Virus record (IMG/VR): IMGVR_UViG_3300033997_000243
Location: 1 to 64,000 of that record
DNA length: 64,000 bases
Direction: 5' to 3' (one strand)
Positions within the stretch are counted from its first letter, which is position 1; the number at the start of each line of letters is the position of its first letter. The notes beneath the pieces were generated by a model that saw nothing but the letters and a program-made list of their open reading frames with translations, was not told where the DNA came from and searched no databases. The position numbers were made by a program, and so were the translations under genes. Below are positions 21,489 to 64,000 of this stretch, piece by piece.

Positions 21489-24400
21489 ATGGCAATTACA
21501 ATCGACGGAGAATTTACTTCGACGAGTGCTACAGCGGAAGAGTTGTTGACTAAAGCTGTTGCTCCTGTTGAGTTAGATCCGAAATTAAAAAAGCTGTATA
21601 CAGAAGCATTTTACACTGTTAATAACAGACCTACTGAAGCTGGTTTCAAAATGGACGGTTTCCGTGAGGCTGCAAGTAAAACACTTTCTGTCAGCATGGG
21701 CCTTAACAATTTCTTTGCTTTCTGTCGTAAAGCTTTAGAGCAAGCAAATATTTTAGATGATATGCCCGACAGCCAAGTAACTGCTGAGCTTCAAGCATTG
21801 GCATCTAATATTATTCAAATGAATGAAGAACCAAGTGAAGATATGGTTCGCCATTTGTTAATTGCTTTAAGTACACAACGCGATACACAAAGTGAAGATG
21901 CTGAAGATAGTCGCTTTCCAAAAGATATGCCTTTTGAAGATCGTCCAACAGCAAACACTATTATCAAACCTTCCTCACGTTATAAAGGCGGTTACGATAT
22001 TCTGTTTAGTGGACAATATGGTCGTGGCGGTTTAAAACTTCACATCAAACCATTCCCTGCTTTACCGACTCGTCCGAATGATGCGCGTCATTTAGGTATG
22101 ATGCAAACAAACTATTCAACACCAATTGCCCAACGCATTATGGCGGCTGCACAGAAAATCTGTGAATTAGTTACTATGCGTAGTGATAAAGGTGTACTGA
22201 CTTTAGATAACGCGCACCAACGTCGTCTTTGTCAATTTCCAGTTGATTACAACTTCAAAAGTTGGAACAGCGAAATAAGTAAACTGATTGGCTTTCCACT
22301 AAACTTCTTTAATAACTTAGATGGTTCAGTTACTTTGTATAAGAGTTTCCTGAACGTACTGGTTATTATCGAACAAGAGCCAGAGTTAATGCAGCCTTGG
22401 GCTTCTTGGAATTCAAGTCAAACTCGCGCACAAATTTCTGGAACAGAATCTATTGAAGTTCCTCGTCCGAAAAACGAAACTTTAATTACACCAACAGTTG
22501 TATTTACTCCTCGCGTTGGTGGATCTATTTCATTAAGTTTTGAACGCGCTATCGTAAACTTTATGTGTCAGAGCGAAACTGGCGATAAAGCACTTTATTG
22601 TTTAAGCTCTTGGGTTACTCAGTGGGCTGGTGCTTTCTTAAAACCAAAACATGCTAAAGGCATTAACTACGATCCTCGTCGTACTGCACAGTATGTTATT
22701 CCACCAAGTCGTATTCAAGAACTTGCTGGTTATCGTGAGAAATTTGGCTATCATGTTTCTGAAAGTAAATCAGATGATGATGGTCTTGTGATTATGCCTG
22801 ATGGACGTTTCGGTTACATTCCAAGTCCTGCCGATTCTTCAAATGATAATGCACTTGCTTATGAGCAAGCATATGAAGAAATGCTGTCACTTTCTTACGA
22901 ATTAGGTTTACCTGCTGGTAGTCCTGCTGGTGCATCTGTTACCGCAAGTAATCCTGAGAAATTAAATATCGCTGGCACAAACGGTTTAATGGCAGATAAA
23001 AACTCTAAGTTAAAATCAATGCGCGGTGCGCTGATTGCATTTAACTGGGATTACAACACTCTGCTTTACGCAAGTGAAACCGATAACTTAGTTCCAAAAG
23101 ATCTGAACGGTTGTACTCCACCGGACGATCTGATTATGGCAGATTTCCTTGGTTTTGATTTTAAAGAACCAGGAGAAAAATCTCAGAAGAAACATATTTT
23201 AACTTCTCTTTCTGAGTTCCGCCATGATCCTGATGCACTGCATACACTGACAAACTTGAACAGTATTTTGCAAATCAGAAAACTTGCACCAGATTTGAAC
23301 ATTCCTGAAGAACGTAAAAAGTTGGTAGATGCTCCAATTTATTTGCGTGTTTTCTTGAACCAGCGTCTTATCAAGTTATTTGAAACCTACAGCTTTTATG
23401 CAAAAGAAGGTGTGGTTCCAAACATTGTTCAATTGATTGAAGAAACCAAGAAAGAAAAGAATTACACTTCTTTTACCTTGGAAGGTACACCGTTAGACTT
23501 CGATCTGTATAGCAATTTAATTCCTGATACAATTGATGGAAGTTCTTTGCTTGCTGATCATTTATATGGTCAAGGCTATGTTGTACTTGCTTTCCTGTTG
23601 AAAGCATTGGCTGATGCCGAAGGTACTCCCGGAACAAATCTTCACGCCATGATTGCAGATGAAGTCGGCTTTAGTAATGTCAAAACTGAATTGCCTGACC
23701 ATCCTGCTCATTTAAACTTCCGTAGTGCTGATACTACTATGGCCAAGTTTAATAACATCTATACTTACTTTGGTGGTTGTTTATTCAAGAATATGTGTAA
23801 GCATATTACTTTGATTCCGAAGAAAGAGCTGTTATATCCTAAGCGTGACGAAAAAGATTTAAACAACAAAAACTTGCCTTCGTTCAACTATATCAGTACG
23901 GATGTTCTACCGCTTGCTTACATATTTTCAAAGTATGTTCCAAAAGCGTTGGATTATTTTGAACGTGCTGAAGAAATGTTTGACCGCTATCAACAAGATT
24001 CTGATGTTGATGTTGAAGATATTGTTGCTCCAGGTATTGTTGCTGTTAACGGCAAAAAACCTCAAATGTTTCCTCACCAAGTAAAAGCTCACCAGTTTTT
24101 ACGAAAAGCGCCGAAGTATGCAATTCTCGACGTAAGTCCAGGTGGCGGTAAAACATTAATTGGTATTACAGACATTTTATGTTTGGCCGAGAAACACAAA
24201 GCAGATCACTTCGTTCCACTCGTACTTGCTCCAGATGGATTGTGTGCAAACTGGTGTGAAGATACTGCCAAGTTTACTAACGGTAACTGGAATACTATTC
24301 CAATCACAACCAAAATCGTTAAAATTTGGGGTCTGGATTTACTGACCAAGATTATTAAGGATGCTCCACGTAACACAATTATTGTTGCTGGTATTCACTT

Positions 24401-39635: not shown

Positions 39636-41288
39636 ATGATTAACCCTTCAAATCCGGCACCTGGTGTCTACGGATATATTAAAGACGCTTCTGAAAGATT
39701 TCCACTCGTTTCCTCAAGTATTCCGGCTTATGTTGGCGAAGCTCAACGTGGTAAACCGAATACACCTATTTTCGTAACCGACAATGAAGATCGTCGTGCT
39801 AAGCTTGGCGATCTGAATCCACAAAAATATGGATTTGCTGGTTACTGTTTAGATCGTAACTTAAGAAATACTAACCGTGCGTTTTTCGTGCGTGTTGTCA
39901 ATCAGGCTAAAACTGCTTTTGCTTGGTTGACTGTTGATGATCCGGCTGCTGTTAATCCTGTAATGCGCTTAACAAATAATTCTGTTGCCGGATCTAATGT
40001 TCCTGAAGGCAATGAAGATCCAATGAAAAATATTGGATTTCTTGCAACAACTCCTGGAATTCAAAACGTAACTGGTTTCTTTAGCGCCAAAGATCCAGGT
40101 GCTTGGAATAATCAAATAACTGTTGCTGTTGGCCCATCAAATCCAGCTGGTGTTCCATTACGTTCAAATGGCCACAACCCAAAACATTTGAATGTTTATG
40201 TTTATTACGGAGCATTTGCTGCTGGTATAGCACCGATTGAAAAGTTTACTGTTAGTTTAACTCAAGAAGTTAACGAGAACGGCGAGCAAATGTATATTGA
40301 AGATGTTATTAACGTCAACAGTAAATACATTGATTTCAAACACAACGAATTGTTTGGCGCTCAATACGAATTCGTTACTTCTGCCCACGAAACTTTGGCT
40401 GGCGGTGATGATGGCCAACGCGCCACAGTAACTCAAATAGTTAATGCTTGGGATGCTTACTCAGATCCTGAACAAATTGACATCAGCTTGTTAGTAAACG
40501 CTGGTTACACTCACCATTTGATTCAACACAAAATGTTGCAATTGGCTGAACAGCGCGGTGATGCTTATGCAATTCTTGATACACCAAGTAATATGCAAGA
40601 AGTTTCAAACAGTGTTGCTTATCGTCGTCAAACATTAAATGCTAATACCTTTTGGGGTGGCATGTACGGCCCTGATATTTTGATTTACGATACATTCACT
40701 GATCGCCAGCTTTATATTCCTATCAGTGGTGACGTTGCACAACGTATGGCATTTACCGCAAGTAATCGTGCTCTTTGGTTTGCCGCTGCTGGTATGGAGA
40801 ATGGTACTCTGCAAAATATTCTTGGTGTTCGCCATGAATATGATCAAGGTGCTCGTGATGCTCTGGAACAAGCTCAAGTTAACTACGTGCGTAAACTTCC
40901 AGATGGTTTAGGTTACTGCTTATGGTCACAGAATACATTGCTTGCTCGTGCAAGTGCTTTCCGTGATGCTAACGTAGTTGCACTTTCACTTCACATTTTG
41001 AAAGCCAGCAAAACTTACACAGAGAATAAATTGTTTGATCCAAACGATGCTTTCTTACGTGCAAGTATCAAAACAAGTGCTGATGATTTTATGCGTCCAA
41101 TTAAAGCTGGCCGTGGTGTTGAATATTTCAATAACCAATGTGATGAAAGAAATAACACTAAAGATTTAATTGCAAACGGCGATTTAGTATTGGACATGCT
41201 TTATGATCCGACTATTGCAACAAAACGTGTACACGTTCGTTTCAATTTGAATCCGAAGGGCAGCACTTTTACAGGCATTGAAGCATAA
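39636..41288 (+). CDS. Contractile tail sheath protein
   Basis: PGVY N-terminus, G.AQRG, FFVRV, AKDPGAWNN, LAGGDDG, WFAAAG, FDPND and CDERNNT...I.NG.L motifs. GGAG RBS before ATG 39636. Confidence 0.92.
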   Translation: MINPSNPAPGVYGYIKDASERFPLVSSSIPAYVGEAQRGKPNTPIFVTDNEDRRAKLGDLNPQKYGFAGYCLDRNLRNTNRAFFVRVVNQAKTAFAWLTVDDPAAVNPVMRLTNNSVAGSNVPEGNEDPMKNIGFLATTPGIQNVTGFFSAKDPGAWNNQITVAVGPSNPAGVPLRSNGHNPKHLNVYVYYGAFAAGIAPIEKFTVSLTQEVNENGEQMYIEDVINVNSKYIDFKHNELFGAQYEFVTSAHETLAGGDDGQRATVTQIVNAWDAYSDPEQIDISLLVNAGYTHHLIQHKMLQLAEQRGDAYAILDTPSNMQEVSNSVAYRRQTLNANTFWGGMYGPDILIYDTFTDRQLYIPISGDVAQRMAFTASNRALWFAAAGMENGTLQNILGVRHEYDQGARDALEQAQVNYVRKLPDGLGYCLWSQNTLLARASAFRDANVVALSLHILKASKTYTENKLFDPNDAFLRASIKTSADDFMRPIKAGRGVEYFNNQCDERNNTKDLIANGDLVLDMLYDPTIATKRVHVRFNLNPKGSTFTGIEA

Positions 41289-52897: not shown

Positions 52898-54595
52898 ATG
52901 AAAAAACTTCGTTTCAACTTAAATCCGTTATCGGTTTCTAACTTGCTTTCTCTTAGTGCTAAATATGATGAACTTGATGATTTTTCTTGGCATAGATTTC
53001 ATGGATCTCGTGGAATAAAAATTGTCCAGCGTAGTCATACTCGCACTATAACTCAGAACGATATTTATGGTATTCGCGCTGCCAGAAGCGGCAACTTTTA
53101 TGTTGTGCTTCCTGATTTATACCATGTAAATTTTGCAATAACTCAAAAAGAAGCTAACAAACTTCTGGAGAACAGTAAAAAAGTCAAAAGACCTGCTATT
53201 AAAAATTTAGCAGGTCAAGACGGCAAGATTGTTCGGGTTATCAATAAACAATCCGACAATCGTGCATGGGATGCGGCTTATTTTAAAGCCGCTCGTGCTG
53301 TTAATGCTGAAGCAAAAGAAGGTGTAAATTTTGCCAATTACCAATGGCGTAGAGTTGGTGATCCTTCAGGCTTTACCGTAAAGAAAGCTGATAAAAAAAT
53401 TCACTACAAACGTGGTGATGTGTTTGGCATTCGCTTTATAAAACCTGCCACTGGTGGAGTGTTAATAGATCAGAATTTTAATCGGTTCGCTATTAACCTT
53501 GACACCTATGACATAATTCTTTCAATGACAACTGTTTTACCAAAAAATAAATGGCCTGAAGGTGGATTCACCAAGGCTGATATGGAAAACAGTATGGAAG
53601 AACAGCGTTTGCGTGAAAAAGAAAAGAGAGCAAGGGAACGTCAATTAATTCGTGAACGGGAAGCTGCTGCAAAACGTAAGCAAATTCAGGAGTTAAGTGA
53701 GAAACGTGCGGCTGAACGTCAAAGACGTAAACAAGAAGCTGAAGATGCTAAAGCTCATTTGCAAACTCTTGAAGAACACATGATTAAAGTTCGTAAATCC
53801 CAAACAGTTAAAATGTCTGACAAGGAAATTGCCAAGCAGATTAAACGTAGACGTTTAGTTAACGCTGAAGATCTTGGCTTGCGTGTTGATCATTTGGCTG
53901 ATGAAGAAGATTTCGATTTGAATTTAGATCTTGACAATCTTCAGATAGAAGGTGAGTTCAATAAAAAGGATGAACCTGAGCGCGAAGCGAAAAAAGTAGA
54001 AGTTGCTGAAATGTTTGAACAGGCAATTTCCGATCTTAAAAAGACTATACCAAAACCTAAACTGGATCTTTCTCAATTTGCTGAAGAAGAAACTGTTGAT
54101 GATCTTGAGGCAGACGAAGAAGTAGAGTACGAGTCCGATGAAGATCAGGAAGAATCTGAAGAAGAGTTTGAAGATGAAGTTGTTGAGGAACCGGAAGAAG
54201 AATTGGTTGAAGATGAAGATCCAGTTGATTTAGATACTGATGATTCAGAAGTAGATACTGCTATTAAAGAGCTTGAAGAACCTGAAGTGAAAAAAGTCGT
54301 TAAAGATTTTGAAGAAGGTTCGATCATAAAGTTCAATAATGATCGCAGTGAACAACGGGAATTCTTGATTTTCGACATATCTACTATGGAAGGTAGCGAT
54401 CACATTATCATCTACAAACTTTATGATTTGACCAACGAGCCTGATGACTATCGTACTGTACGTATTGATAAACGTCAGAAACGTAGAATCGAAGATATGG
54501 CCGAATTTGTTCGCAAGCTTCCGGTTCGTCAGTTGATTGAAAAACAAAGTTTAGCTGACACACTAACAAAAAATAAAGAACCTATTGAGAGTTGA
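52898..54595 (+). CDS. Hypothetical protein with basic N-terminal half, coiled coil and acidic linker
   Basis: AAGGA RBS; leader MKKLRFNLNPLSVSNLLSLSA. Confidence 0.8.
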   Translation: MKKLRFNLNPLSVSNLLSLSAKYDELDDFSWHRFHGSRGIKIVQRSHTRTITQNDIYGIRAARSGNFYVVLPDLYHVNFAITQKEANKLLENSKKVKRPAIKNLAGQDGKIVRVINKQSDNRAWDAAYFKAARAVNAEAKEGVNFANYQWRRVGDPSGFTVKKADKKIHYKRGDVFGIRFIKPATGGVLIDQNFNRFAINLDTYDIILSMTTVLPKNKWPEGGFTKADMENSMEEQRLREKEKRARERQLIREREAAAKRKQIQELSEKRAAERQRRKQEAEDAKAHLQTLEEHMIKVRKSQTVKMSDKEIAKQIKRRRLVNAEDLGLRVDHLADEEDFDLNLDLDNLQIEGEFNKKDEPEREAKKVEVAEMFEQAISDLKKTIPKPKLDLSQFAEEETVDDLEADEEVEYESDEDQEESEEEFEDEVVEEPEEELVEDEDPVDLDTDDSEVDTAIKELEEPEVKKVVKDFEEGSIIKFNNDRSEQREFLIFDISTMEGSDHIIIYKLYDLTNEPDDYRTVRIDKRQKRRIEDMAEFVRKLPVRQLIEKQSLADTLTKNKEPIES

Positions 54596-54596
54596 C

Positions 54597-56561
54597 ATGA
54601 CAAAAACTCAATTAAAATCTTTTCTTAGTGATGGGTGGCGTAAAGCCACTCGCACTGAGTTTGATGCACTATTGGATTATTTAGATCACCAATACTACAA
54701 TCTGGCTAAAAAACCGATTGCAGATAATGATTACGATGATCTGAAGGAAAAATATTTATCTCGGTTTCCTAAATCACCTCGTAAGTTCAAAGTGGGACAT
54801 AAGGTTGGGAATAAAAGAGTCGAAGTGCGTTTACCTAATCCAATGAGTAGTCTTGATAAAATCAAAGACGATAAAAAAATTGGATTATTCACCAAGAAAT
54901 ACAGTGGCCCTTACGTTCTCAGTGACAAAGAAGATGGAATGAGTTTACAACTTTGTTATGACAAAGGTGTTCCAGTCGAATTGTATTCTCGTGGTGATGG
55001 ATTAAAGGGCCAAGATATTTCTCATTTACTTCCTTATCTAAAGATTCCAAAACGCATTAAAATTAAAACACGTTTTGACATTCGTGTCGAAGCAATTGCG
55101 GCTAACTCTACTTTTGATAAACATCTGCATAAGGATTCTGGTGGAGATTTTAGTGCAGTACGTAATGCGGCTGGTGGCATCATTAATAAGTTACCTACCA
55201 GTAAAGATTTTGCAAAGTACGCAAACTACGCAAAACATTTGACTCTGTTCGCCTTTAAAATTCTTAACGGCCAAGGAAGTAAACTTAAACCAAGCGCTCA
55301 GTTTAAATTGCTTGAATCGCTTGGCTTCAAAGTAGTGCCTCATAAAGTTGTCAAAACAATCAACTTCAGTATTCTTTCGGAATACTTGGCAAAACGCATT
55401 CAACTTAGTGATTATGAAATTGACGGCATTGTTGTCGAAGAAGATAACTACTATCCTGTAGGTCATGAAGATCCAAAACACGCTAAGTCTTTTAAAGAAA
55501 ATAGCGCAGCCAGTATGGTGGATATTCCAGTTAAATCTGTTGAGTGGGAAGCAAGTCGTACTGGAAATTTAATTCCGGTTGTTACCATTAAACCTACTCG
55601 AATTGGTGGAGTTACAGTAAGCAACTTTACTGGACACAACGCATTTTATATTCAACATGGATATAAAAGTGAGTTGAAAGATACACCTCCATATAAAGCT
55701 CGACCTTTAGGTAAAGGCGCGATCATTCGTGCTGTAAGATCTGGCGGTGTAATTCCTTATATTGTTGAAGTGGTTAAGGCCGCACCTAAACCACAGATGC
55801 CAGATGTTCCTTATAAAATATCTGGTATACACGCCAAACTTTTAAACAAAACAAGTTCAGGTTCTGATCTTCAGAAGCAAAAGAAAATTGAACACTTCTT
55901 TGTTCGTATCGGTGTGGATGGATTCAAACTTAGTACCGTACAAAAGTTTTGGGACAACGGTTACAAAAAACTCAGCCAATTTCTTAAATTGGATGCCGAA
56001 GATTTTATCAACATCGAAGGTCTAGGTACACGTAAAGCCCAACTGTTTGAACAAAGTTTAGAGAAAGCTTTGAGTGAACTTACCTTTACTAAAGTTGCTG
56101 ATGCCAGCGGTTATCTTTTGAATTTTGGTACTCGTAGACTTGACGCTATTTCTGAAGCATATCCTGATGTTTTATCTTGGGCTGATAAATATAGTCAGAG
56201 TCAGATAGAAACTAAAATACGTATGCTCACTGGTTTTAAAGATTTGGCCGATGAATTTGCTATTGCCTTACCTAAGATCAAAAAGTTTGTAGATACATTC
56301 AAACTCAAGATTAAGGTTGTTAAGAAAGTTATTAAAGGCAATAAATTGTCGGGAACAAACGTAACCTTTACTGGTGTACGTGACGAAGAACTGAAAAAGT
56401 TCATTACAGAGCAAGGCGGCAAGGTACAGGACTGGCGCAAGGACACTAATTTAGTCTTAGTGAAAGATCTTGGCTTCTCAAGTGGAACCACAGGTAAAGC
56501 GCAGGATGCTGGTATTCCAATTATGTCTGTGGAACAATTCCGCAAAAAATACAGGGTGTAA
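54597..56561 (+). CDS. ligA: NAD+-dependent DNA ligase
   Basis: Domain Ia YYN...D.DYD.L, MSSLDK, motif I DKEDG, SRGDG, RNAAGG, EIDGIV, RSGGVIP, HhH segments and C-terminal BRCT (FTG...GG...T..V). Confidence 0.95.
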   Translation: MTKTQLKSFLSDGWRKATRTEFDALLDYLDHQYYNLAKKPIADNDYDDLKEKYLSRFPKSPRKFKVGHKVGNKRVEVRLPNPMSSLDKIKDDKKIGLFTKKYSGPYVLSDKEDGMSLQLCYDKGVPVELYSRGDGLKGQDISHLLPYLKIPKRIKIKTRFDIRVEAIAANSTFDKHLHKDSGGDFSAVRNAAGGIINKLPTSKDFAKYANYAKHLTLFAFKILNGQGSKLKPSAQFKLLESLGFKVVPHKVVKTINFSILSEYLAKRIQLSDYEIDGIVVEEDNYYPVGHEDPKHAKSFKENSAASMVDIPVKSVEWEASRTGNLIPVVTIKPTRIGGVTVSNFTGHNAFYIQHGYKSELKDTPPYKARPLGKGAIIRAVRSGGVIPYIVEVVKAAPKPQMPDVPYKISGIHAKLLNKTSSGSDLQKQKKIEHFFVRIGVDGFKLSTVQKFWDNGYKKLSQFLKLDAEDFINIEGLGTRKAQLFEQSLEKALSELTFTKVADASGYLLNFGTRRLDAISEAYPDVLSWADKYSQSQIETKIRMLTGFKDLADEFAIALPKIKKFVDTFKLKIKVVKKVIKGNKLSGTNVTFTGVRDEELKKFITEQGGKVQDWRKDTNLVLVKDLGFSSGTTGKAQDAGIPIMSVEQFRKKYRV

Positions 56562-56562
56562 T

Positions 56563-57027
56563 ATGAAAAAACGCAGAATCCAATTGAACATACCTTTAAA
56601 AAGTTTGGCTGCTGGTGAACGTGTTCGTAAACAGACTGGTGTTATACCTTATGCTTACGATAAAAAGGGCGTGTTACATATTTTATTAATTAGTTCACGC
56701 CATGCTGGAAACTGGGGCATACCAAAAGGTAAAAAAGAAAAAGACTTGGGCAAAAAAGAAAGTGCTGAAGTTGAAGCTTGGGAAGAAGCCGGAGTCGATG
56801 GTGATGTTACCTTCAATCTCGGCCAATACTCTTACCGCAAAGGATCTACTGGTGTTGCTCAAAAAGTAACTGTGTACGGCCTTAAGGTAGAGAATATGTA
56901 CAAAAAGTTTCCAGAAAAAGATATGCGCGTTCGCAAATGGTTTGAAGCCAAAGATGCTTTGAAAAAACTTAATGCAAAATTGCGCCCATTTCTTTCTCAT
57001 TTGATTGTAAACTTAGACAACGAATAG
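56563..57027 (+). CDS. Nudix hydrolase
   Basis: ILLISSR...WGIPKG and Nudix box G.....ESAEVEAWEEAGV. ATG 56563. Confidence 0.9.
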   Translation: MKKRRIQLNIPLKSLAAGERVRKQTGVIPYAYDKKGVLHILLISSRHAGNWGIPKGKKEKDLGKKESAEVEAWEEAGVDGDVTFNLGQYSYRKGSTGVAQKVTVYGLKVENMYKKFPEKDMRVRKWFEAKDALKKLNAKLRPFLSHLIVNLDNE

Positions 57028-57037
57028 TAGGTACATT

Positions 57038-57958
57038 ATGTTTGGTAGCATGATTGTAGCCAGCGACTATTGGAGACACTTTATACCTTTTGCTCCTGAC
57101 ATTGAAGTATCAGTCACTTTGGGGCAAGAGGTATTTATTGATCTTGAGCCTTATATAATTCAGGGCGCTCGTGATTTCTTTGATAGTTCAAGTCCAGATC
57201 CTTTAGTTCTACCTTTACGTGTTCCTGTTCAACGTGGTTGGCGTTTGGATTATATTGCTGAAGTTATGCCAAAGAAAGGCACTTTACGAAAAGATGAATT
57301 CAAGAAAGGATTTATTTATAGACCTTATGGTGAGATTGGTAATACGGAGGATTGCTTTAACTATCAATTCAGCAATGGAACACAAAAATCCAATTTTGGC
57401 AAAATCTCTATAAATGTAATTGAGCCATTTAAAGTAGATTGGAAAATATATGCTAAAACTCGTGATGATGTTACAGGTATATCTCCTGCGCGTTTCAGAA
57501 TGAGCATTAGCGTTGCGGCCAATCATCCAAGTTTCTTTCTTGATACGATTCACGGTTTCCGTTGGTACTATGAACGTATTTATGTGGATCAAGATGGCTT
57601 TGTTCGTAATGTAAGAACATTCATGTACGGATTTGAAACATTTACCAATTCAGATCAACGTACAACCATGATTGATCGCGCTAGAAATCTTAGCGAAAGA
57701 ACATTTAAAACAGACTCTGACATTGTTGGTATAGATCCTCGCACTAATCTGCGCTATGTACCAACAAACAAGTTTCCTAAAATAGAATGTGAGTTCTGGA
57801 ATTTTCCGTACTCAAGAAGAGTTTATTACGCTTCTGATAGCCCTGCTTTCTATTTGGTCACTGACATGAGCAGACCTGAAGTTTATACTTTACCAATCGA
57901 ATCTTTATTTACAAGAAGCTGGAACACCAGCGGAAAAATAATACTACCACCAGTGTAG
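57038..57958 (+). CDS. Hypothetical protein with an Ig-like (Big_9-type) domain
   Basis: P.KGTL...FIYRP...D.F.Y.FSNG...S..G.I.INV pattern. Confidence 0.55.
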   Translation: MFGSMIVASDYWRHFIPFAPDIEVSVTLGQEVFIDLEPYIIQGARDFFDSSSPDPLVLPLRVPVQRGWRLDYIAEVMPKKGTLRKDEFKKGFIYRPYGEIGNTEDCFNYQFSNGTQKSNFGKISINVIEPFKVDWKIYAKTRDDVTGISPARFRMSISVAANHPSFFLDTIHGFRWYYERIYVDQDGFVRNVRTFMYGFETFTNSDQRTTMIDRARNLSERTFKTDSDIVGIDPRTNLRYVPTNKFPKIECEFWNFPYSRRVYYASDSPAFYLVTDMSRPEVYTLPIESLFTRSWNTSGKIILPPV

Positions 57959-57966
57959 GGGAATTT

Positions 57967-59091
57967 ATGAGAGTTGCAGTTTATACAACATGCTTTAACA
58001 ATTTAAGTATCATTGAGAATTTTCTTGCGGAAACAAAGCAAGCAAGTTTGATCTTTATTATGGATCTTGGAAGTACAGATGGATCTTATGAAGCACTTAA
58101 AGCCGCTGAAAACTCAGATTCCAGAATTAAAGTTTCTGAATTTGGGGCTGCTAGTGGAATGGATTTGGCTGCGGCTAAAAACATGCTTCTTCATATGTGC
58201 CAAAATACTTATGCTGATTGGTGTGTAAATTTTAATATAGACTGCAACTTATCTTTATTTACTAAAGGTGGCTGGTTTTCCGCTCTGGAGAAAGCTGTTT
58301 CAGAAAATCCAAGCGCGACAAATTTTTCTATATCCCACTCACTTCTACAGTTAAGGGATAATAACACTACACTGGGTATTTCCTCCACAACACAAGTTAC
58401 CACTATTGTAAGTGGTACAGCTCGTGCTGTATGGGAACACCCAGTTTTTCCCGTTTTAAAGGCCGTTGGTGATAACGCTTATGCCAGCATTACAATGTCA
58501 ACCTCAAGTTTTGGTATCTATGATTTTATACAACAAAACATAGATTACTGGAACAAGAATCGTTCAAGTCAACTTGCCACTTATTATGCTGCTCGTGCGC
58601 TATCCAATAGCTCTAATATCAAAAGCTTTTTGCCTACACTAGAGGCAGCATTGAACCTTGAGCTTGATAGTAGTCTGGATCTATGTGTAGAAATTTGTTG
58701 TCTGTTAAATCAAATAACAGATGATAGTAAATTTTTATATCGTGCTCTTTCCTATTGCCCTACCTCAAGAGATGTATTTTATTCTCTTGCTCATGACTTT
58801 TTCTTGGATGAAGATTACTGGCAGTGTATAGGCATTTGTCATCAAATCCTCAAGATTCCTCAAGATGCTGATAATTTTATTGTATATCGCGATCCGAACA
58901 TTCTGTCAAAGACATATCACTTACTTTCCACTGCTTTATACAGAATTGATTCCGAGGTTTTACTTGGTGAATCCATAAAATACTTAGAGCAAGCTATTCA
59001 GCTAGATCCTAATTCTGTTGCACTTAAGAATGATTTAGCTAAGTTGATTCAAGCTGCTCAGGAGACTAATAGTGAAGAAAGTACAACTTGA
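57967..59091 (+). CDS. GT2-fold glycosyltransferase-like protein with C-terminal TPR repeats
   Basis: VAVY....N...I..F...IFIMDLGSTDGS...AAAKN...ADWC...W..PV; TPR-like YLEQAIQLDPN. The DxD position reads NID. Confidence 0.7.
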   Translation: MRVAVYTTCFNNLSIIENFLAETKQASLIFIMDLGSTDGSYEALKAAENSDSRIKVSEFGAASGMDLAAAKNMLLHMCQNTYADWCVNFNIDCNLSLFTKGGWFSALEKAVSENPSATNFSISHSLLQLRDNNTTLGISSTTQVTTIVSGTARAVWEHPVFPVLKAVGDNAYASITMSTSSFGIYDFIQQNIDYWNKNRSSQLATYYAARALSNSSNIKSFLPTLEAALNLELDSSLDLCVEICCLLNQITDDSKFLYRALSYCPTSRDVFYSLAHDFFLDEDYWQCIGICHQILKIPQDADNFIVYRDPNILSKTYHLLSTALYRIDSEVLLGESIKYLEQAIQLDPNSVALKNDLAKLIQAAQETNSEESTT

Positions 59092-60769
59092 TCTAGTGGA
59101 TTCATTGTTTGTATCTGAATCCGCAAGAAAAATAACTAAAGAGCCTGATTGGTGGAAAAAATTATCCACCAATCAGCAAAAGAAGTATCTGGAAAAACAC
59201 AAAACAAGTCAACTTGCCAAATACCTGCGTGAAAAAGAAGCGCAGAAAAAACGTCTGGCTAAAAAGAAGGCGGAACGTGCGAATAAAGCAGTTGACGTTG
59301 AACCTGAAGAACTTGATCAGGATATAGCGGAACTTGAAGTTCCAGAGCCTGAAGTTGATTTGGTTCCTCCACTGACTCCTGTAGATCCTGCTAAAAAGAA
59401 GGAAAGTATTTTTAGCAGATTACGTAAAGCTGTTGCTCCAATTTTAAAACGTAAGAAAAGATCTCCAGAAGAATTAGCGGTTGCTATAGAACGTGTAACT
59501 CGTGACGAAATTGATCGCAGAGCAAACGATAAATTTCCACAAGTCAGATCTACAATCGCAGAACAGACATCCAAATTTAGCAATAAAGTAAAATCTGTTG
59601 CTAGTGCCATAAGCGATCAATTATCACCTGCAAAGAAAAAAGAATTAGGTTCTTACCTTAAAGCAAAATCTAAGGGAATGAGTACCAAGAATGATTCTAA
59701 AGGTGAACAAGTTGCTCGTGATGTAGGTTTTGGTCTTGCTGAAGTTGCATTAGGCTTAGGTGCGTTAGTAGCAGTTTTTTCAGGTGCTGCTGTTATAGCT
59801 GGAGCATTGACTGCCGCTTATCTTGGTTTCCGTGATTATAAATCAACTATTCCACGTTCACGTAAAAAAGATATTCCTGTTCCACAACAAGAGCAAGAAA
59901 ATCCAGCTGAAGTTGAACAGAACTCTACTGAAACCAAAGCGCAGGAAAGCACTGATACAAGTAATCAACAAGAGACAGTTCCTTCTGAAACTAAAGTGGA
60001 AGAAGTTAAGACTGAGCCAGTTAAAGAAAAAGACGATCTAGATTTTGAAGATGACGATTCAGAACTTGATCGTATGCTGGAAAATGCACATAAAAGTTTA
60101 GAGGAAGAAGAACCTGCTTCTGAAAAAGCTCCAGAGGAATTGGAAAGTAAATCTTCTGATGCAGAAATTGAAGATGATCCTGTTGAATTCTTAACAGCTG
60201 ATTTTGCTGTGTGGTTACAAGATCAAGATTTAGATTTGATTGCACGTAAGATCTCTGAATACATTGCTATAGAAGAAATGAAGGCCGAAGGTTGGCAACC
60301 AAAGCTTAGTGATTTATCCGATGACGAACTTGACGCTGTTTTAAGTCCTCGTCAAGAAATAGAAGAACTTGTGTCCAATAGTTCTGATGACTCTGATGAA
60401 GATTACGAACAGCTTTATGTTGAAGTTTCTGACGATAAGCCTAAAAAGCTTACACTACGCTGCGATAAAGAATGCGCCAAACTTCCTGTTGATCAACGCT
60501 GGCGCTATAACTTACGCTTTGGAAATCGTATTATAGGAAATATTCGTTGTGTTGACAAAACAACCGGCGGAAAATTTTCACGTAAATGGATATGTGTGTT
60601 AGAGGATGGATTTGACGAAAGCGTATATCGTTCAGGTCGTCCAATTAAAAATGATCAACCGTACACACTTATCAAACGCGGAAAAATTTATCTTGTTCAG
60701 CCAATCAAACAAACATTTGATGAATGTTATGCTTGGGCTAAATTGAACATAGACAAGGAATTTTTATGA
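59072..60769 (+). CDS. Hypothetical protein with central hydrophobic hairpin and acidic linkers
   Basis: GGAG RBS and GTG start; WWKKLS..QQKKYLEKH motif; hydrophobic GFGLAEVALGLGALVAVFSGAAVIAGALTAAYLGF. Confidence 0.75.
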   Translation: MKKVQLDLVDSLFVSESARKITKEPDWWKKLSTNQQKKYLEKHKTSQLAKYLREKEAQKKRLAKKKAERANKAVDVEPEELDQDIAELEVPEPEVDLVPPLTPVDPAKKKESIFSRLRKAVAPILKRKKRSPEELAVAIERVTRDEIDRRANDKFPQVRSTIAEQTSKFSNKVKSVASAISDQLSPAKKKELGSYLKAKSKGMSTKNDSKGEQVARDVGFGLAEVALGLGALVAVFSGAAVIAGALTAAYLGFRDYKSTIPRSRKKDIPVPQQEQENPAEVEQNSTETKAQESTDTSNQQETVPSETKVEEVKTEPVKEKDDLDFEDDDSELDRMLENAHKSLEEEEPASEKAPEELESKSSDAEIEDDPVEFLTADFAVWLQDQDLDLIARKISEYIAIEEMKAEGWQPKLSDLSDDELDAVLSPRQEIEELVSNSSDDSDEDYEQLYVEVSDDKPKKLTLRCDKECAKLPVDQRWRYNLRFGNRIIGNIRCVDKTTGGKFSRKWICVLEDGFDESVYRSGRPIKNDQPYTLIKRGKIYLVQPIKQTFDECYAWAKLNIDKEFL

Positions 60770-61311
60770 AAAAAGCTAAATTGTTTTTAAGTACATCAGG
60801 TGTCAGTGCTATTGTAAAAGGCTACCAGACTCCTGTTTATATGGCTGCACTTCAATGCTTTCCGCCAAATCAACAACTTGATGTTAAAAGAGCTGTTGAG
60901 CAAATAGATTTCTTAGGTAAGCAAGCACTTAAAGAAATGAAAGTCGCTGTTGTTCCTGCGGGTAACAGTGAATTTACTCAAGGAAAGCTTGCCAGCGATT
61001 TAGAAAGTTTACAGCAAGCTTATCAAGCAAGCTTAAGCGGCCACAATAACAAACACGAGTTATACAACTTATTCAATAGTTTGCGTAACCGTGTTGAGTT
61101 GGAAATACGTAAAGAATTTCCTCTTGCAAGTCTTGTAGAAATGTTTGCTTATCTTGACGTTATTTGCAAACACTTTATCGAACAAAATAAAGGCATCGAT
61201 CTTATTTCTGATTACATATTTACTGATGGTCAGAAATTTAAACGTAATCCCACACTGTTGCTTGCTCAGCAAAAACGCTTAGAGCAGCAAATTGCTGAAA
61301 ACATTGATTAA
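60766..61311 (+). CDS. Hypothetical protein
   Basis: AAGGA RBS; leader MKKAKLFLSTSG. Confidence 0.75.
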   Translation: MKKAKLFLSTSGVSAIVKGYQTPVYMAALQCFPPNQQLDVKRAVEQIDFLGKQALKEMKVAVVPAGNSEFTQGKLASDLESLQQAYQASLSGHNNKHELYNLFNSLRNRVELEIRKEFPLASLVEMFAYLDVICKHFIEQNKGIDLISDYIFTDGQKFKRNPTLLLAQQKRLEQQIAENID

Positions 61312-61324
61312 GGAGAAGTACACA

Positions 61325-62119
61325 ATGGTTCCTGTTAAGTTAAATACGGATATAGGTAAGTTTGTATCTTCTTCTTTTGATATTGGCCGTTATTCAGTTC
61401 GTGAAGGTGAAGGTCGCGGTATAGATCTGCACAAACTTTCAAAAAACAATATGGCAATCACAGCTAAACCAGAAATGGTTGGTGGCTGTGAGGGTGTTGT
61501 ACTTGATGTTAATGCTTGGCTTCCAGCCGCTGCAAAAGTTTACAACACAAGTCCTGATATTCGTGATTATGTAATGGTTCCTACTCCGGCATTAATCACA
61601 GATCTGCCAAATACAAATGGCGATAGTGCAAGCTTGAGTGAGTTGTTACAGTTCAAACCTAAGTTGGGTATGCAAGCATACAAAACTTACAAAGGTAAAC
61701 CAACTTTCCGCGAACATGATAATCAGGATCACACCAAAGCGCGTGGCATTATTTTAGATGCTTATTTAAAACCGCTTCGTGGTTTCCGTAACAATCACGC
61801 AAAATTAATTCTGCTGTTGGCATATGATCGTACTCGTGATCCTGAAATCTGTAATCGCATTCTGACAAACGAATGCAATACGCATAGCGTAGGATTTTAT
61901 TACACAAGTTACACTTGCAGTTATTGCGGCCACACTACCCACCAAGACACTATGTTAACTTGTTCACATACTCGTTTAGGTCGCAAGCCGTACTTGAAAG
62001 ATGGGCAAATTGTTTACCGTTGGTGTCACGATTCAACTGGTTTTGAATGCAGCCAAGTTGAAAATCCGGCTTACGTAAGTAACCAACACGATCCTAAAAA
62101 CATTATGATGGTGCGCTAA
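61325..62119 (+). CDS. Prohead (capsid maturation) serine protease, HK97/herpes-type, with Zn-finger insert
   Basis: N.NGD, F.EH (His), HSVG (Ser), CSYC...CSH insert and FECSQVENPA (E.S.V..PA). AAGGAG RBS before ATG 61325. Confidence 0.7.
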   Translation: MVPVKLNTDIGKFVSSSFDIGRYSVREGEGRGIDLHKLSKNNMAITAKPEMVGGCEGVVLDVNAWLPAAAKVYNTSPDIRDYVMVPTPALITDLPNTNGDSASLSELLQFKPKLGMQAYKTYKGKPTFREHDNQDHTKARGIILDAYLKPLRGFRNNHAKLILLLAYDRTRDPEICNRILTNECNTHSVGFYYTSYTCSYCGHTTHQDTMLTCSHTRLGRKPYLKDGQIVYRWCHDSTGFECSQVENPAYVSNQHDPKNIMMVR

Positions 62120-63039
62120 TGGAATTCAGATACAATTCAGATACTCCATTCCAATTAGGTGAATGGTTTAAAATAGAGCGTAATCATTTCTGGCATGTGT
62201 ACTTAGATTCACGTATTAAAATTCGTGATGACAAAGGCGCTGTTGCTGTAGTTGATGAACGTACTTTGCGAGATCTTGTTGAAAAAAGCTTAATGCTTAA
62301 TGGCGATCCTGCTTTGTTCGATTCTGTTTGGATTACACTAAACAACATTAAACCTGTTGCCATTGACTCTAAGGATATTGTTAGCGAAAGTGCAACATTG
62401 AATTACAACTACCGTGTTGTTCTTCAACCTCCTGCAATTAAAAAAGCGCATCCATTAGCAATAGGTTTTCTTGAGGAAAATCTTGAACGCAGAAGAAATG
62501 AATGGTGCTACCCATTAGCTGACATTGAGCGTAAGGCCGTAAATCAAGCTTTAGATTACACAGGATTTAAGAAGAAGATCAACTTAAATCATTTTATTCT
62601 GTGTAAATCTGATGTAGTACCTACTTGCTTCAGTCGTCAAACCGATGCCTCTATAAAAGCGCGTCAGTTGCTTGTTCTGAACTTCAATCAACTTCAAGGC
62701 TTACGTTCAGGTGCAATAACTTCAGGATTCCTTGCTCAAGTTATCACGCACGAGCTTGCTCACTTTTTAATGTATGATGGCATTGTACGTCAATCTCAGA
62801 TGGAGCGTTACAAACAAGCTTTGGTTGCAAGACGTTTGCATCCAGATCAATTTAATCATGCAGGATATACTTATCCTTGGTATGAAGAAGCTTGGGCTAC
62901 ATTGTGTGAGTATATGGTTCACGGTAAATCTGAACGTGGTTTAAGCTGCACAGATGGTTGGGAACTTGCAAAACAATACTTCGATAACAACTTTTTAATT
63001 AACGGAAATCCAACTGGTGATCGCTTAATTAAAATTTAA
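62119..63039 (+). CDS. Zincin metallopeptidase-like protein
   Basis: ITHELAHF (HExxH) with downstream EEAWA third ligand. Confidence 0.65.
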   Translation: MEFRYNSDTPFQLGEWFKIERNHFWHVYLDSRIKIRDDKGAVAVVDERTLRDLVEKSLMLNGDPALFDSVWITLNNIKPVAIDSKDIVSESATLNYNYRVVLQPPAIKKAHPLAIGFLEENLERRRNEWCYPLADIERKAVNQALDYTGFKKKINLNHFILCKSDVVPTCFSRQTDASIKARQLLVLNFNQLQGLRSGAITSGFLAQVITHELAHFLMYDGIVRQSQMERYKQALVARRLHPDQFNHAGYTYPWYEEAWATLCEYMVHGKSERGLSCTDGWELAKQYFDNNFLINGNPTGDRLIKI

Positions 63040-63048
63040 GGAAAACAT

Positions 63049-63447
63049 ATGAAAATCAAAGTATTCGTTTCGCAAAGTTCGTACTCTTTGGCCAGACTTA
63101 AAGCATCTGACTCTAAATTCAGACAGTTGGCTGACGACAGATTTACTTCGTCACAAATCAAAAAACTTATGACCAAAGGAACGAAACTTCTTATGGTTGT
63201 TACAGGTGCTTACACACGTAAGGCTGATAACAAAGTAACTCCACAACTAAACAAATATACTCTTGTCATCAAAGAAGTTGAAATAGCTGGCAACGGAAAA
63301 TTAAAAAGAGTGTTGATTGCTCCAGAAGGTAAACATTCAAAAGATGAAATTAAACCTTTATCTGCGGCTGCTTTGGCAAAACTGTTGAACGGCGAAAAGG
63401 CTACTCTTAAATCTAAGAAAGGCACCAAAAGTGCTTCTCTTAAATAA
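63049..63447 (+). CDS. Small basic hypothetical protein, paralogue of the next gene
   Basis: AAGGA RBS; leader MKIKVFVSQSS. Confidence 0.75.
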   Translation: MKIKVFVSQSSYSLARLKASDSKFRQLADDRFTSSQIKKLMTKGTKLLMVVTGAYTRKADNKVTPQLNKYTLVIKEVEIAGNGKLKRVLIAPEGKHSKDEIKPLSAAALAKLLNGEKATLKSKKGTKSASLK

Positions 63448-63465
63448 ATTCAATAGGAAAATCTT

Positions 63466-64000
63466 ATGAAAATTCAAGTTATGTTGTCTGAGAGCGCAGA
63501 TTTAACTGCTGCCCAAGAAAAGAAAATTGTTGTTGGCGGTACTTTTACTTTATATACAATAGTATCAACTAAAAAGACTCCACCAAGACCGAGCATTGGC
63601 TTTATTCCGAAAGAAACTATAGAGCGCTACAAAAAGATGCCTCCTGTTATAACAAAGGCGGCCACTAACTATCGTATAACCGAAGTGAATAGCACTAAAT
63701 CTGGATCAGTTAAATCCATAGTTGCTGTTGCAGAGCGTGACAATTCTCTTACACGTAAGCATCCCGGCAATTTATCAACTTTAACATTAACTAAAGCTAA
63801 ACTTTTGAGTTTAATCGGAAACAAAATAACAAAAGAAGATGTTGGAAGTCAGAGTATAACACTTACTACAAATTCTAAAGATACAACAGCATTCTTTAAC
63901 AAAACTGAGGCAAAAGACAAACAACGCATAAAAGCCTTAGATGAACAAATAGCTAAACTTCAAAAACAACGTGAAGAATTAGCTGGAGTTCAGAAAAAGC
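63466..64000 (+). CDS. Basic hypothetical protein (runs off the window end)
   Basis: AGGA RBS; ATG 63466, MKIQVMLSESADLTAAQEKK...; open to 64000. Confidence 0.75.
   Translation, partial: MKIQVMLSESADLTAAQEKKIVVGGTFTLYTIVSTKKTPPRPSIGFIPKETIERYKKMPPVITKAATNYRITEVNSTKSGSVKSIVAVAERDNSLTRKHPGNLSTLTLTKAKLLSLIGNKITKEDVGSQSITLTTNSKDTTAFFNKTEAKDKQRIKALDEQIAKLQKQREELAGVQKK

What the first reader, a model, noticed from the sequence alone, without database searches (positions are those of the whole stretch)
52898..64000. Shared N-terminal leader ending in S-x-S on late proteins around the prohead protease: candidate capsid-targeting and maturation code
Seen: unrelated proteins start with a short, usually basic, alternating-hydrophobic segment followed by hydrophobic-x-S-x-S, mostly then A, S or G. 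Examples: MKKLRFNLNPLSVSNLLSLSA (52898), MKKVQLDLVDSLFVSESA (59072), MKKAKLFLSTSG (60766), MVPVKLNTDIGKFVSSSF (the protease itself, 61325), MKIKVFVSQSS (63049), MKIQVMLSESA (63466), and the variant MKKRRIQLNIPLKSLAA (Nudix, 56563). Far upstream, the SNF2 helicase starts MAITIDGEFTSTSA (21489). Internal copies fall at likely domain boundaries: DIVSESA (62119), LESKSS and LVSNSS (59072), LASVSA and YSSLSA (18282). I did not see it at the N-termini of the replication enzymes. Established: T4 internal proteins carry an N-terminal capsid-targeting sequence removed by gp21, and the phiKZ protease cleaves after S/A/G-x-E. Inference: this phage uses a Ser-based leader and cleavage signal to package a helicase, a Nudix hydrolase, a metallopeptidase, a membrane protein and basic proteins into the head for injection. 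If so, the injected cargo could be read from sequence and used as a loading tag.
Basis: partly seen in the sequence, partly recalled or inferred. Interest (0 to 1): 0.8.

Follow-up and report, generated by a model that had tools for sequence, protein, structure and literature searches.

The report
Serine leader tag on phage proteins
About thirty otherwise unrelated proteins of this uncultured 320-kb phage start with the same short tag ending in Ser-x-Ser, and the same motif sits where the capsid protein should be trimmed, so it is most likely the recognition code of the head-maturation protease and a packaging tag, though no protein data yet prove it.

Summary
The window is the first 64 kb of a 319,518-bp jumbo phage of the PaBG/Lu11 ("Lupandier") group. 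Genome-wide, about 32 of 400 proteins begin with M-K-[IV]-[LF]-[IV]-S-x-S-[AS]. S.S is the most enriched gapped pair at residues 3-14, and 33 proteins carry hydrophobic-S-x-S at the N-terminus against 9.5±3.1 in shuffles.

- The carriers share no similarity beyond the leader.
- Serine codons vary, so selection acts on the protein.
- The motif is kept in orthologues from four diverged lineages. In GC-rich PaBG it becomes A-x-A.

The same motif lies at residues 71-76 of the 364-aa major capsid protein. PaBG's capsid protein loses about 20% of its mass on maturation. The motif also lies at the N-terminal edge of the protease family itself, whose model has the T4 gp21 / herpesvirus assemblin fold.

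Carriers are strongly basic and cluster next to the protease and capsid genes. The giant helicase orthologue is a measured PaBG virion protein.

Best reading: a T4-CTS-like leader cut by the prohead protease at small-x-small. Cleavage and packaging remain unproven. New variant of a known kind.

The parts
61325..62119 (+). Head-maturation (prohead) serine protease, 264 aa. Candidate catalytic His131 and Ser188. Cys198/Cys201/Cys213/His215 look like a zinc site.
   Evidence: phrog_18299 'head maturation protease', E 6e-88. tblastn hits to prohead proteases of NCTB, Dickeya JA29, Erwinia phages and PaBG. AF2 model from an 88-sequence alignment, pLDDT 86. Best solved match is T4 gp21 (5jbl, Z 9.9), then the VZV and HCMV proteases. 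Invariant residues.
61325..61375 (+). The protease's own leader, MVPVKLNTDIGKFVSSS, followed by F. Candidate autoprocessing site.
   Evidence: hydrophobic-x-[SA]-x-[SA]-F-[DG] is conserved across about 90 family members, after N-terminal extensions of 0 to about 130 aa. Residues 1-20 have low pLDDT. PaBG has MSRSF at this place.
52898..52957 (+). Leader MKKLRFNLNPLSVSNLLSLS of a 565-aa acidic protein with a KMPT-N domain. The second S-x-S (LSLS|A) is the conserved one.
   Evidence: ORF and RBS. KMPT-N, E 3e-13, residues 29-93. The G001 orthologue has FLSQSA|KFEQLDEY. The PaBG orthologue has MLMIAEA|KVKDL.
59072..59122 (+). Leader MKKVQLDLVDSLFVSES of a 565-aa protein with a Gly/Ala-rich hydrophobic segment.
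   Evidence: All 10 database homologues (44-83% identity) keep S-[EI]-S directly before ARREIT.EPDWW. L044 has LISESA and L045 has LISESS.
60766..60798 (+). Leader MKKAKLFLSTS of a 181-aa protein just upstream of the protease.
   Evidence: The G001 orthologue has MKPKILALSSG, where the motif register is less clear.
63049..63078 (+). Leader MKIKVFVSQS of a 132-aa basic protein (pI 10.3). First gene of a run of leader genes downstream of the protease.
   Evidence: An MKIFVSQSA gene lies at the matching place in G001. No Pfam or PHROG family. The ESM Atlas model is of low confidence.
63466..63495 (+). Leader MKIQVMLSES of a 275-aa basic protein. The gene continues past the window end to genome 64293.
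   Evidence: G001 orthologue has MKVFISHSA.
21489..21527 (+). Leader-like start MAITIDGEFTSTS of the 2022-aa helicase.
   Evidence: phrog_21391 and Helicase_C. G001 has YSVSS and PaBG has NSLSA at the N-terminus. The PaBG orthologue is virion band 1, 221,161.95 Da (PMC7412058 Table 1; mass match; orthology).
56563..56610 (+). Nudix hydrolase start MKKRRIQLNIPLKSLA. A degenerate S-x-A variant; membership uncertain.
   Evidence: NUDIX, E 2.5e-7. The L044 orthologue starts MAKVTLSLSA. The G001 orthologue has HIESAT.
62380..62391 (+). Internal V-S-E-S (residues 88-91) in the 306-aa HExxH protein encoded just after the protease. Possible internal cut site.
   Evidence: G001 has TASTSN a few residues away, so the motif is roughly kept but not in strict register.

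Best explanation
The short N-terminal segment is a leader. Its consensus is M-K-[IV]-[LF]-[IV]-S-x-S-[AS], it is 5-20 residues long, and it alternates hydrophobic residues like a beta-strand. It marks proteins for the prohead and ends in the recognition site of the phage's assemblin-fold prohead serine protease (61325-62119).

The protease prefers a hydrophobic residue followed by small-x-small: Ser-x-Ser in this AT-rich lineage, Ala or Ser in GC-rich PaBG. I infer that it cuts after the second small residue. The same site trims about 76 residues from the major capsid protein (FLSLS|A, genome 75253-76347). A matching site at the protease's own N-terminus suggests self-trimming.

About 32 mostly small, basic, otherwise unrelated proteins carry the leader, together with a 2022-aa helicase and a type IB topoisomerase. 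They would be loaded into the head, lose the leader, and travel with the DNA. This is the T4 capsid-targeting-sequence logic with a different cleavage code.

Shown here:
- the motif, its N-terminal specificity and its conservation;
- the fold of the protease;
- the position of the capsid-protein site;
- the basic character of the carriers.

Inferred:
- that cleavage happens;
- which bond is cut;
- that the leader, rather than the rest of each protein, causes packaging.
For: 1. Enrichment. S.S is the top gapped pair at residues 3-14. The shuffle test gives z = 7.7 in this genome and z = 4.7 in relative G001. The full leader profile (built from the leader candidates themselves, so their own scores are circular) scores 10 or more at 28 N-termini, against 0.8 expected from the rate at internal sites.

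2. It is not paralogy. BLASTP of the carriers with the first 15 residues removed finds one weak pair only.

3. It is not a DNA repeat. The Ser codons vary between TCN and AGY.

4. Conservation with drift.
- 17 of 23 G001 orthologues of leader proteins keep a leader, against 5 of 207 other orthologues.
- Leader lengths differ, for example MKIFVSQSA against MKIKVFVSQSS.
- Two further lineages, with proteases 63% and 48% identical, show the same leaders beside the protease.
- Ten homologues of 59072 all keep S-x-S.

5. S-to-A swaps at homologous places in PaBG:
- VSVS|KKK against VALA|RRG;
- LSLSA|KY against MIAEA|KV;
- capsid protein SLSA against AVAAA.

6. The capsid protein has F-x-S-[LM]-S in all 18 close homologues (one has S-M-S) at residues 71-75 of 364, which is 21% of its length. 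PaBG's capsid protein loses about 20% of its mass on maturation (PMC7412058).

7. The protease family keeps [SA]-x-[SA]-F at the edge of its conserved core. Its fold matches T4 gp21 with Z 9.9, followed by herpesvirus proteases.

8. The carriers have median pI 9.4 against 6.5 for other proteins (p = 3e-7). Eleven carrier genes lie in the block that runs from just upstream of the protease down to the putative scaffold and capsid genes.

9. The PaBG orthologue of the helicase is a measured virion protein. Two carriers have KMPT-N domains. One hits the PHROG 'minor head protein and DNA pilot'.
Against: - There are no proteomic or N-terminal sequence data for this phage or any relative that show a cut at S-x-S.
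- The PaBG mass loss comes from SDS-PAGE and fixes the site only roughly.
- In PaBG the N-terminal enrichment is weak (z = 1.8).
- The closest solved protease, T4 gp21, cuts after Glu, not after a small residue.
- For 99975 (topoisomerase IB) the conserved sequence runs on seamlessly from the motif, as it does in PaBG, so there the motif may be part of the fold.
- Thirty-two cargo proteins, 8% of the genes, is a large number.
- The S-x-S excess in the putative scaffold 72136 is only modest once its Ser content is allowed for (20 against 13.1, P = 0.045).
- Gene starts come from my own simple gene caller.
Confidence: 0.6

Rival explanations
1. The leader is an assembly or targeting strand that docks cargo onto the scaffold, portal or protease, but it is not removed. 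Alternatively, it is removed by another peptidase, such as the HExxH protein 62119 encoded next to the protease.
For: The alternating hydrophobic pattern suits beta-strand addition. An HExxH protein sits directly after the protease, and KMPT-N domains are named for their fusion to metallopeptidases. Nothing here shows the scissile bond.
Against: The motif recurs inside the capsid protein, exactly where maturation cleavage is expected, and at the edge of the protease's own core. A docking strand would not need two invariant small residues that swap S for A together.
Confidence: 0.14
2. The shared start is not a capsid signal. It is either the first beta-strand of small alpha/beta folds that have diverged beyond recognition (MKILV... 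is a common strand-1 start), or a favoured 5' coding context for high expression.
For: MK[IV]L[IV] starts are common in alpha/beta proteins, and A/U-rich early codons favour initiation (own knowledge). In 99975 the motif continues into conserved sequence. Some leader genes form tandem arrays that could be old paralogues, and 197736/198254 are 29% identical.
Against: - Carriers range from 69 to 2022 aa and include known, unrelated folds: helicase, topoisomerase IB, KMPT-N.
- Leader length varies between orthologues by insertions and deletions while S-x-S stays.
- The internal capsid-protein and protease sites are not explained.
- Ser codons are not especially A/U-rich, and both codon families are used.
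- There are no Pfam hits to TIR or Rossmann families.
Confidence: 0.1
3. The leader directs proteins to another destination, for example the phage-encoded GroEL/GroES pair, or to membrane or secretion machinery.
For: The genome encodes what look from their N-terminal sequences like GroEL and GroES homologues at 106.2-108.2 kb; I ran no family search on them. The title of a paper listed in the references of PMC10052503 says the N-terminus of T4 gp23 directs it to GroEL.
Against: The capsid-protein copy is internal, not N-terminal. The hydrophobic run is 3-5 residues, too short for a Sec or lipoprotein signal. The carriers are basic, soluble-looking proteins clustered with head genes.
Confidence: 0.05
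4. Compositional chance in a Ser-rich, AT-rich genome, combined with selective reading.
For: S-x-S is a short motif, and Ser makes up about 7-8% of residues.
Against: Shuffle, internal-window and unbiased pair tests all reject this. The motif is conserved in orthologues.
Confidence: 0.01

Closest known systems
Phage T4 capsid-targeting sequence (CTS) of the internal proteins, removed by the prohead protease gp21
   Same: - A leader of about 10 residues is shared by otherwise unrelated, basic, hypervariable proteins.
- The leader ends at the protease site that is also used on the major capsid protein.
- The genes cluster near the protease and scaffold genes.
- The protease has the same fold (5jbl, Z 9.9).
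[quoted passage not shown]
   Different: - T4's site is (L/I)-x-Glu (own knowledge). Here it is hydrophobic-Ser-x-Ser, with no acidic P1.
- There are about 32 carriers here, against a handful in T4.
- The protease is a separate sequence family with a Cys/His zinc-ribbon-like insert, and it gave no Pfam family at E 0.01 or better, so no Pfam prohead-protease model matched.
- Cleavage and packaging are unproven here.
Giant phages phiKZ (gp175) and SPN3US (gp245): proteolysis of many head and ejection proteins
   Same: A jumbo phage in which many head proteins, possibly including virion enzymes, would be processed by one prohead protease at a three-residue motif with a small residue at P3. All identified SPN3US cuts follow A-x-E (PMC10052503).
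   Different: P1 is Glu in those phages, and their propeptides are often long. Here both key positions are small residues, and most leaders are 5-10 residues. The Lupandier group is a different lineage from the phiKZ-like phages (PMC7412058).
Herpesvirus assemblin (maturational protease)
   Same: Same fold: VZV Z 7.5, HCMV Z 5.9. A small residue at P1 and self-release at its own site. The consensus (V/L/I)-x-Ala|Ser is from my own knowledge. PMC4498786 confirms that PrV assemblin ends in Ala225.
   Different: The herpesvirus substrates are the protease-scaffold polyprotein only. It is not a leader shared by dozens of cargo proteins. I know of no described link between the two specificities.
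Phage P1 Dar system and the 'polyvalent' injected proteins
   Same: Large helicase-type and enzyme cargo is packaged in the head and injected. KMPT-N is a domain named from that protein class. PaBG's virion contains the 221-kDa helicase-like protein.
   Different: No shared short cleavable leader with a defined motif is described for those systems in the papers I could search.

Membership tests
T4-type capsid-targeting leader plus prohead-protease system (as a mechanism) | A prohead serine protease of the gp21/assemblin fold, encoded with the head genes | tested here: met
   phrog_18299, E 6e-88. AF2 pLDDT 86. 5jbl Z 9.9 with 138 of 165 residues aligned. The putative scaffold and the capsid-protein genes lie 10-14 kb downstream.
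T4-type capsid-targeting leader plus prohead-protease system (as a mechanism) | A short N-terminal leader shared by proteins that are otherwise unrelated | tested here: met
   32 carriers. No similarity beyond residue 15, except for one weak pair.
T4-type capsid-targeting leader plus prohead-protease system (as a mechanism) | The leader ends in the same motif at which the major capsid protein is matured | tested here: inconclusive
   FLSLSA lies at residues 71-76 of the capsid protein and is conserved in 18 close homologues. This fits PaBG's roughly 20% mass loss. The true mature N-terminus has not been measured.
T4-type capsid-targeting leader plus prohead-protease system (as a mechanism) | The leader is removed in mature virions and is sufficient to load a foreign protein | not testable with these tools
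   This needs virion N-terminomics and leader-reporter packaging.
T4 CTS / gp21 by sequence specificity ((L/I)-x-Glu) | Glu at P1 | tested here: not met
   The position between and after the two Ser is variable: L, T, I, E, V, Q between them, and A, S, N, K after them. No acidic residue is required.
phiKZ/SPN3US-type motif (S/A/G-x-Glu, A-x-Glu) | A small residue at P3 and Glu at P1 | tested here: not met
   The small P3 residue is shared. Glu is not. The second fixed position is Ser, or Ala in PaBG.
Sec or lipoprotein signal peptide | A hydrophobic core of about 10 or more residues, followed by A-x-A or a lipobox Cys | tested here: not met
   The hydrophobic run is 3-5 residues and there is no lipobox. 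The whole leader is often only 6-10 residues.
One diverged paralogue family (shared descent explains the shared start) | Detectable similarity along the proteins | tested here: not met
   The carriers also include a helicase, a topoisomerase IB and KMPT-N proteins.

The most novel reading that the evidence does not exclude
A sequence-readable 'zip code' (M-K-[IV]-[LF]-[IV]-S-x-S) marks about 8% of this phage's proteome for loading into the head and for delivery with the DNA. The marked set includes a 2022-aa helicase, a type IB topoisomerase, KMPT-N proteins and some 25 basic orphan proteins. The code is read by an assemblin-fold protease with small-x-small specificity, which is closer to herpesvirus assemblin than to T4 gp21. 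If so, the injected cargo of a whole uncultured jumbo-phage clade can be listed from sequence alone, and the leader could serve as a portable packaging tag.
Probability: 0.4. Interest if true: 0.8.

Novelty: new variant of a known kind. Interest (0 to 1): 0.68.

Why it matters
Jumbo phages pack many proteins into the head, but the cargo is known only where virions have been purified and analysed, as for T4, phiKZ and SPN3US. If this leader is the loading and cleavage signal, the head cargo of an uncultured clade can be read directly from genomes. That clade has dozens of metagenomic members and cultured relatives on Pseudomonas, Dickeya and Erwinia.

The cargo would point to early-acting, probably anti-defence or takeover proteins among genes that now have no annotation. 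It would also add a third specificity class for assemblin-fold prohead proteases, small-x-small, beside (L/I)-x-E and (S/A/G)-x-E. Finally, it would offer a short tag for loading foreign proteins into large capsids.

Tried and rejected
- Megablast of 59-64 kb against the phage collection found nothing. The only nucleotide-level kin is an identical IMG/VR contig.
- The single-sequence AF2 model of the protease failed, with pLDDT 29.
- Foldseek against the PDB found nothing for the good model. A profile search of PDB sequences gave only zinc-finger noise. The fold was recovered only by VIA-align and by BFVD.
- Pfam and PHROGs left most leader proteins without a family.
- ESM Atlas look-ups of two carriers were uninformative, so they give no evidence for a shared fold such as TIR or Rossmann.
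- I tested whether PaBG shows the same N-terminal enrichment. It shows it only weakly (z = 1.8), and A.A is not among its eight most enriched pairs, so the genome-wide leader system cannot be claimed for PaBG.
- I matched the PaBG Table 1 masses to ORFs. Only the large or order-consistent ones (gp202, gp213, gp257, gp261, gp94, gp191) are trustworthy. The matches for gp80, gp81, gp214 and gp263 were chance mass coincidences and were discarded.
- The idea that the acidic 777-aa protein 72136 is chopped at many S-x-S sites is only weakly supported once its 13% Ser content is allowed for.
- Literature searches found no earlier description of a cleavage motif for this phage group.

Full report
**What the window is.** The window is bases 1-64000 of a single 319,518-bp contig with 37.6% G+C. 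A 20.8-kb stretch of it, genome 51325-72116, is identical to part of an IMG/VR contig. No close relative exists in the phage collection at the nucleotide level. Protein matches place it with the jumbo myophages PaBG, Lu11, NCTB, Dickeya JA-phages and Erwinia Alexandra-like phages. The PaBG paper calls this the 'Lupandier group' (PMC7412058). The order fibre / KMPT-N protein / NAD ligase / small protein (the Nudix hydrolase here) / 306-aa protein / glycosyltransferase / 59072-like protein / protease is syntenic with PaBG.

**Observation check.** All quoted N-termini and internal copies are present at the stated places.
- In the interval, 6 of 11 genes carry hydrophobic-S-x-S within 22 residues of the start, against 3.1% of internal windows (p = 4e-7).
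- I called genes on the whole genome with a simple hexamer and RBS caller (400 genes). The rate of hydrophobic-S-x-S is 12 per 1000 sites at residues 1-5, 5 per 1000 at residues 6-10, and about 1.5-3 per 1000 further into the proteins.
- Thirty-three proteins have the motif starting at residue 10 or earlier. Shuffles give 9.5±3.1, and equal internal windows give 4 of 392.
- In an unbiased scan of all gapped residue pairs, S.S is the top pair at residues 3-14 (59 against 25.7, p = 1e-8). In the relative G001 it ranks second (52 against 26.3).

**The leader.** Anchored on S-x-S, the preceding residues read K-[IV]-[LF]-[IV], and the following residue is A, S, N, K, G or V. There are two length classes. 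MKI[KR]VF[VI]SxS occurs in the run of genes just after the protease. MKIL[VI]SxS[AS] occurs, for example, in a run of leader genes on the minus strand at 194.5-198.3 kb. A short MIIS[LI]S form also exists. About 32 proteins qualify. Sequences scoring this high are rare inside proteins: 9 sites in about 82,000. That profile was built from the leader candidates themselves, so their own high scores are circular; only the internal rate is an independent control.

**Neither paralogy nor a DNA repeat.** With the first 15 residues removed, the carriers show no BLASTP similarity to each other, apart from 197736/198254 at 29%. They include a helicase, a type IB topoisomerase (PF01028, 1e-15), KMPT-N proteins and many orphans. 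The two Ser are encoded by TCN or AGY in all combinations, so selection acts on the peptide.

**Conservation.**
- The relative G001 is a 286,584-bp IMG/VR contig with a protease 75% identical and no nucleotide similarity to this genome apart from one 73-nt stretch. It shares 230 reciprocal-best orthologues.
- Of the 23 leader proteins that have an orthologue there, 17 orthologues score as leaders and three more keep S-x-S. Only 5 of 207 other orthologues score as leaders.
- Leaders differ in length between orthologues while the S-x-S stays: MKIFVSQSA against MKIKVFVSQSS, MKITLVSTSKSSLVSESA against MKIKVFISSS.
- Two further lineages show the same leaders beside the protease: L044 with a protease 63% identical and L045 with one 48% identical. 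The L044 Nudix orthologue starts MAKVTLSLSA.
- All ten database homologues of 59072 keep S-[EI]-S directly before the conserved ARREIT.EPDWW.
- In GC-rich PaBG the homologous places carry Ala: VSVS|KKKGG against VALA|RRGKG, LSLSA|KY against MIAEA|KV, and capsid protein SLSA against AVAAA. The protease (MSRSF) and the helicase (NSLSA) keep Ser. The requirement therefore looks like small-x-small.

**Link to the protease.**
- The 264-aa product of 61325-62119 is a head-maturation protease by PHROG (E 6e-88).
- With an 88-sequence alignment it folds confidently (pLDDT 86).
- Its best solved match is T4 gp21 (Z 9.9), then the VZV, HCMV and KSHV proteases. BFVD matches include many 'prohead serine protease' / COG3740 entries.
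- His131 and Ser188 are invariant.
- Across the family, a hydrophobic-x-[SA]-x-[SA]-F-[DG] block marks the start of the conserved core. It follows N-terminal extensions of 0 to about 130 residues. Residues 1-20 of the model are of low confidence. That is what an autoprocessing site would look like.

**The capsid protein.** By synteny and homology with PaBG gp80, the capsid protein is genome 75253-76347, 364 aa. It carries FLSLSA at residues 71-76. All 18 homologues with 57% identity or more keep F-x-S-[LM]-S there, and farther clades have [LM]-[ST] or A-x-A. Cutting there removes 21% of the chain and leaves about 288 residues. PaBG's capsid protein was reported to lose about 20% of its mass on maturation, and several PaBG virion proteins are processed (PMC7412058).

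**Properties of the carriers.**
- Median pI is 9.4 against 6.5 for the other proteins (p = 3e-7), and 72% have pI above 8.5. The T4 internal proteins are also basic (own knowledge); PMC3012670 reports that their lysine residues contact the DNA phosphates.
- Eleven carrier genes lie in the block that runs from just upstream of the protease down to the acidic 777-aa protein, a 233-aa protein and the capsid protein.
- Two carriers have KMPT-N domains, and one hits the PHROG 'minor head protein and DNA pilot'.
- PaBG's virion band 1 is gp202, a 'RuvB helicase-like protein' of 221,161.95 Da (Table 1). This matches the 1969-aa PaBG ORF (221,159 Da), which is the orthologue of the 2022-aa helicase at 21489.
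- PaBG tail proteins in that table have orthologues here without leaders.

**Mechanism proposed.** A short amphipathic strand ending in hydrophobic-small-x-small is recognised in the assembling prohead, by the protease itself or by the scaffold. The protease then cuts after the second small residue. This frees the mature capsid protein, its own core and the cargo. The cargo stays with the DNA and is delivered on infection. P1 as the second Ser is an inference. It is the most invariant position, and T4, phiKZ and SPN3US all use a P3/P1 pair (for SPN3US; own knowledge for the others).

**Limits.**
- No cleavage or packaging has been measured.
- PaBG shows only weak genome-wide enrichment.
- In the topoisomerase the motif runs straight into conserved sequence.
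- The Nudix start here is a degenerate S-x-A.
- The HExxH protein 62119 has only an internal site, roughly conserved.
- The multi-site reading of the putative scaffold 72136 is weak.
- My gene caller is home-made.

**Comparison and novelty.** The closest system is the T4 CTS with gp21: the same logic and the same protease fold, but a different motif and many more carriers. phiKZ and SPN3US share the small P3 residue but need Glu at P1. Herpesvirus assemblin shares the fold and a small P1 residue (own knowledge). I found no description of a cleavage motif or a shared leader for the Lupandier group in the searchable literature. I rate this a new variant of a known kind. It is well supported by comparative evidence and untested at the bench.

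Noticed in passing
outside the window: genome 67437-67509 (L001:7437-7509), between genes 66201 and 67630: This 73-nt intergenic stretch is the only nucleotide-level match (89%) between this phage and relative G001. It starts with AGGAGGTGATCC, which is complementary to the 3' end of 16S rRNA, and it contains a hairpin CGTGG...CCACG. There is no tRNA and no Rfam match. It could be a small RNA or a translational element inside the cluster of leader genes.
   Followed up: partly
outside the window: genome 106241-108164, minus strand: Products of 535 aa and 101 aa whose N-terminal sequences look like GroEL and GroES (MAAKDVRFGQDARSL..., MKIKPLQDRLVIRV...). The phage may carry its own chaperonin pair. 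I ran no family search on them.
   Followed up: no
outside the window: genome 99975-101642: A type IB (eukaryote/poxvirus-like) DNA topoisomerase (PF01028, 1e-15) that begins MIISIS|AVSK. The PaBG orthologue begins MHTSLS|AVQK. If the leader reading holds, this would be a virion-packaged topoisomerase IB, as in poxviruses.
   Followed up: partly
outside the window: genome 72136-74469: A 777-aa, 13% Ser, highly acidic protein with two repeated N-terminal modules, each with a Cys-rich ribbon, encoded just upstream of the capsid gene. Its PaBG orthologue is annotated 'ATPase', or '60S ribosomal-like protein L2-A' in the other record, which looks wrong. Its position and composition suggest a scaffold.
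   Followed up: partly
window 39636-41288, and genome 77692-79317: Two tail-sheath paralogues. Both match the PaBG sheath protein gp213, and the annotated PaBG stretches I read show three sheath genes. This points to an unusual duplicated sheath set in the group.
   Followed up: no
window 52898-54595, and genome 80283-80963: Two leader proteins carry the KMPT-N domain, named for its fusion to KTSC and metallopeptidase domains. An HExxH protein (62119-63039) lies next to the protease. These parts may be the separated pieces of what other phages encode as one injected 'polyvalent' protein.
   Followed up: partly
outside the window: upstream of genome 65125, 70964, 197736 and 198254: GGGCTTCGGCCC-type GC-rich hairpins, terminator-like, sit 15-30 nt before the TAAGGAA ribosome-binding site of several leader genes. 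This suggests that these genes are separate transcription units.
   Followed up: no
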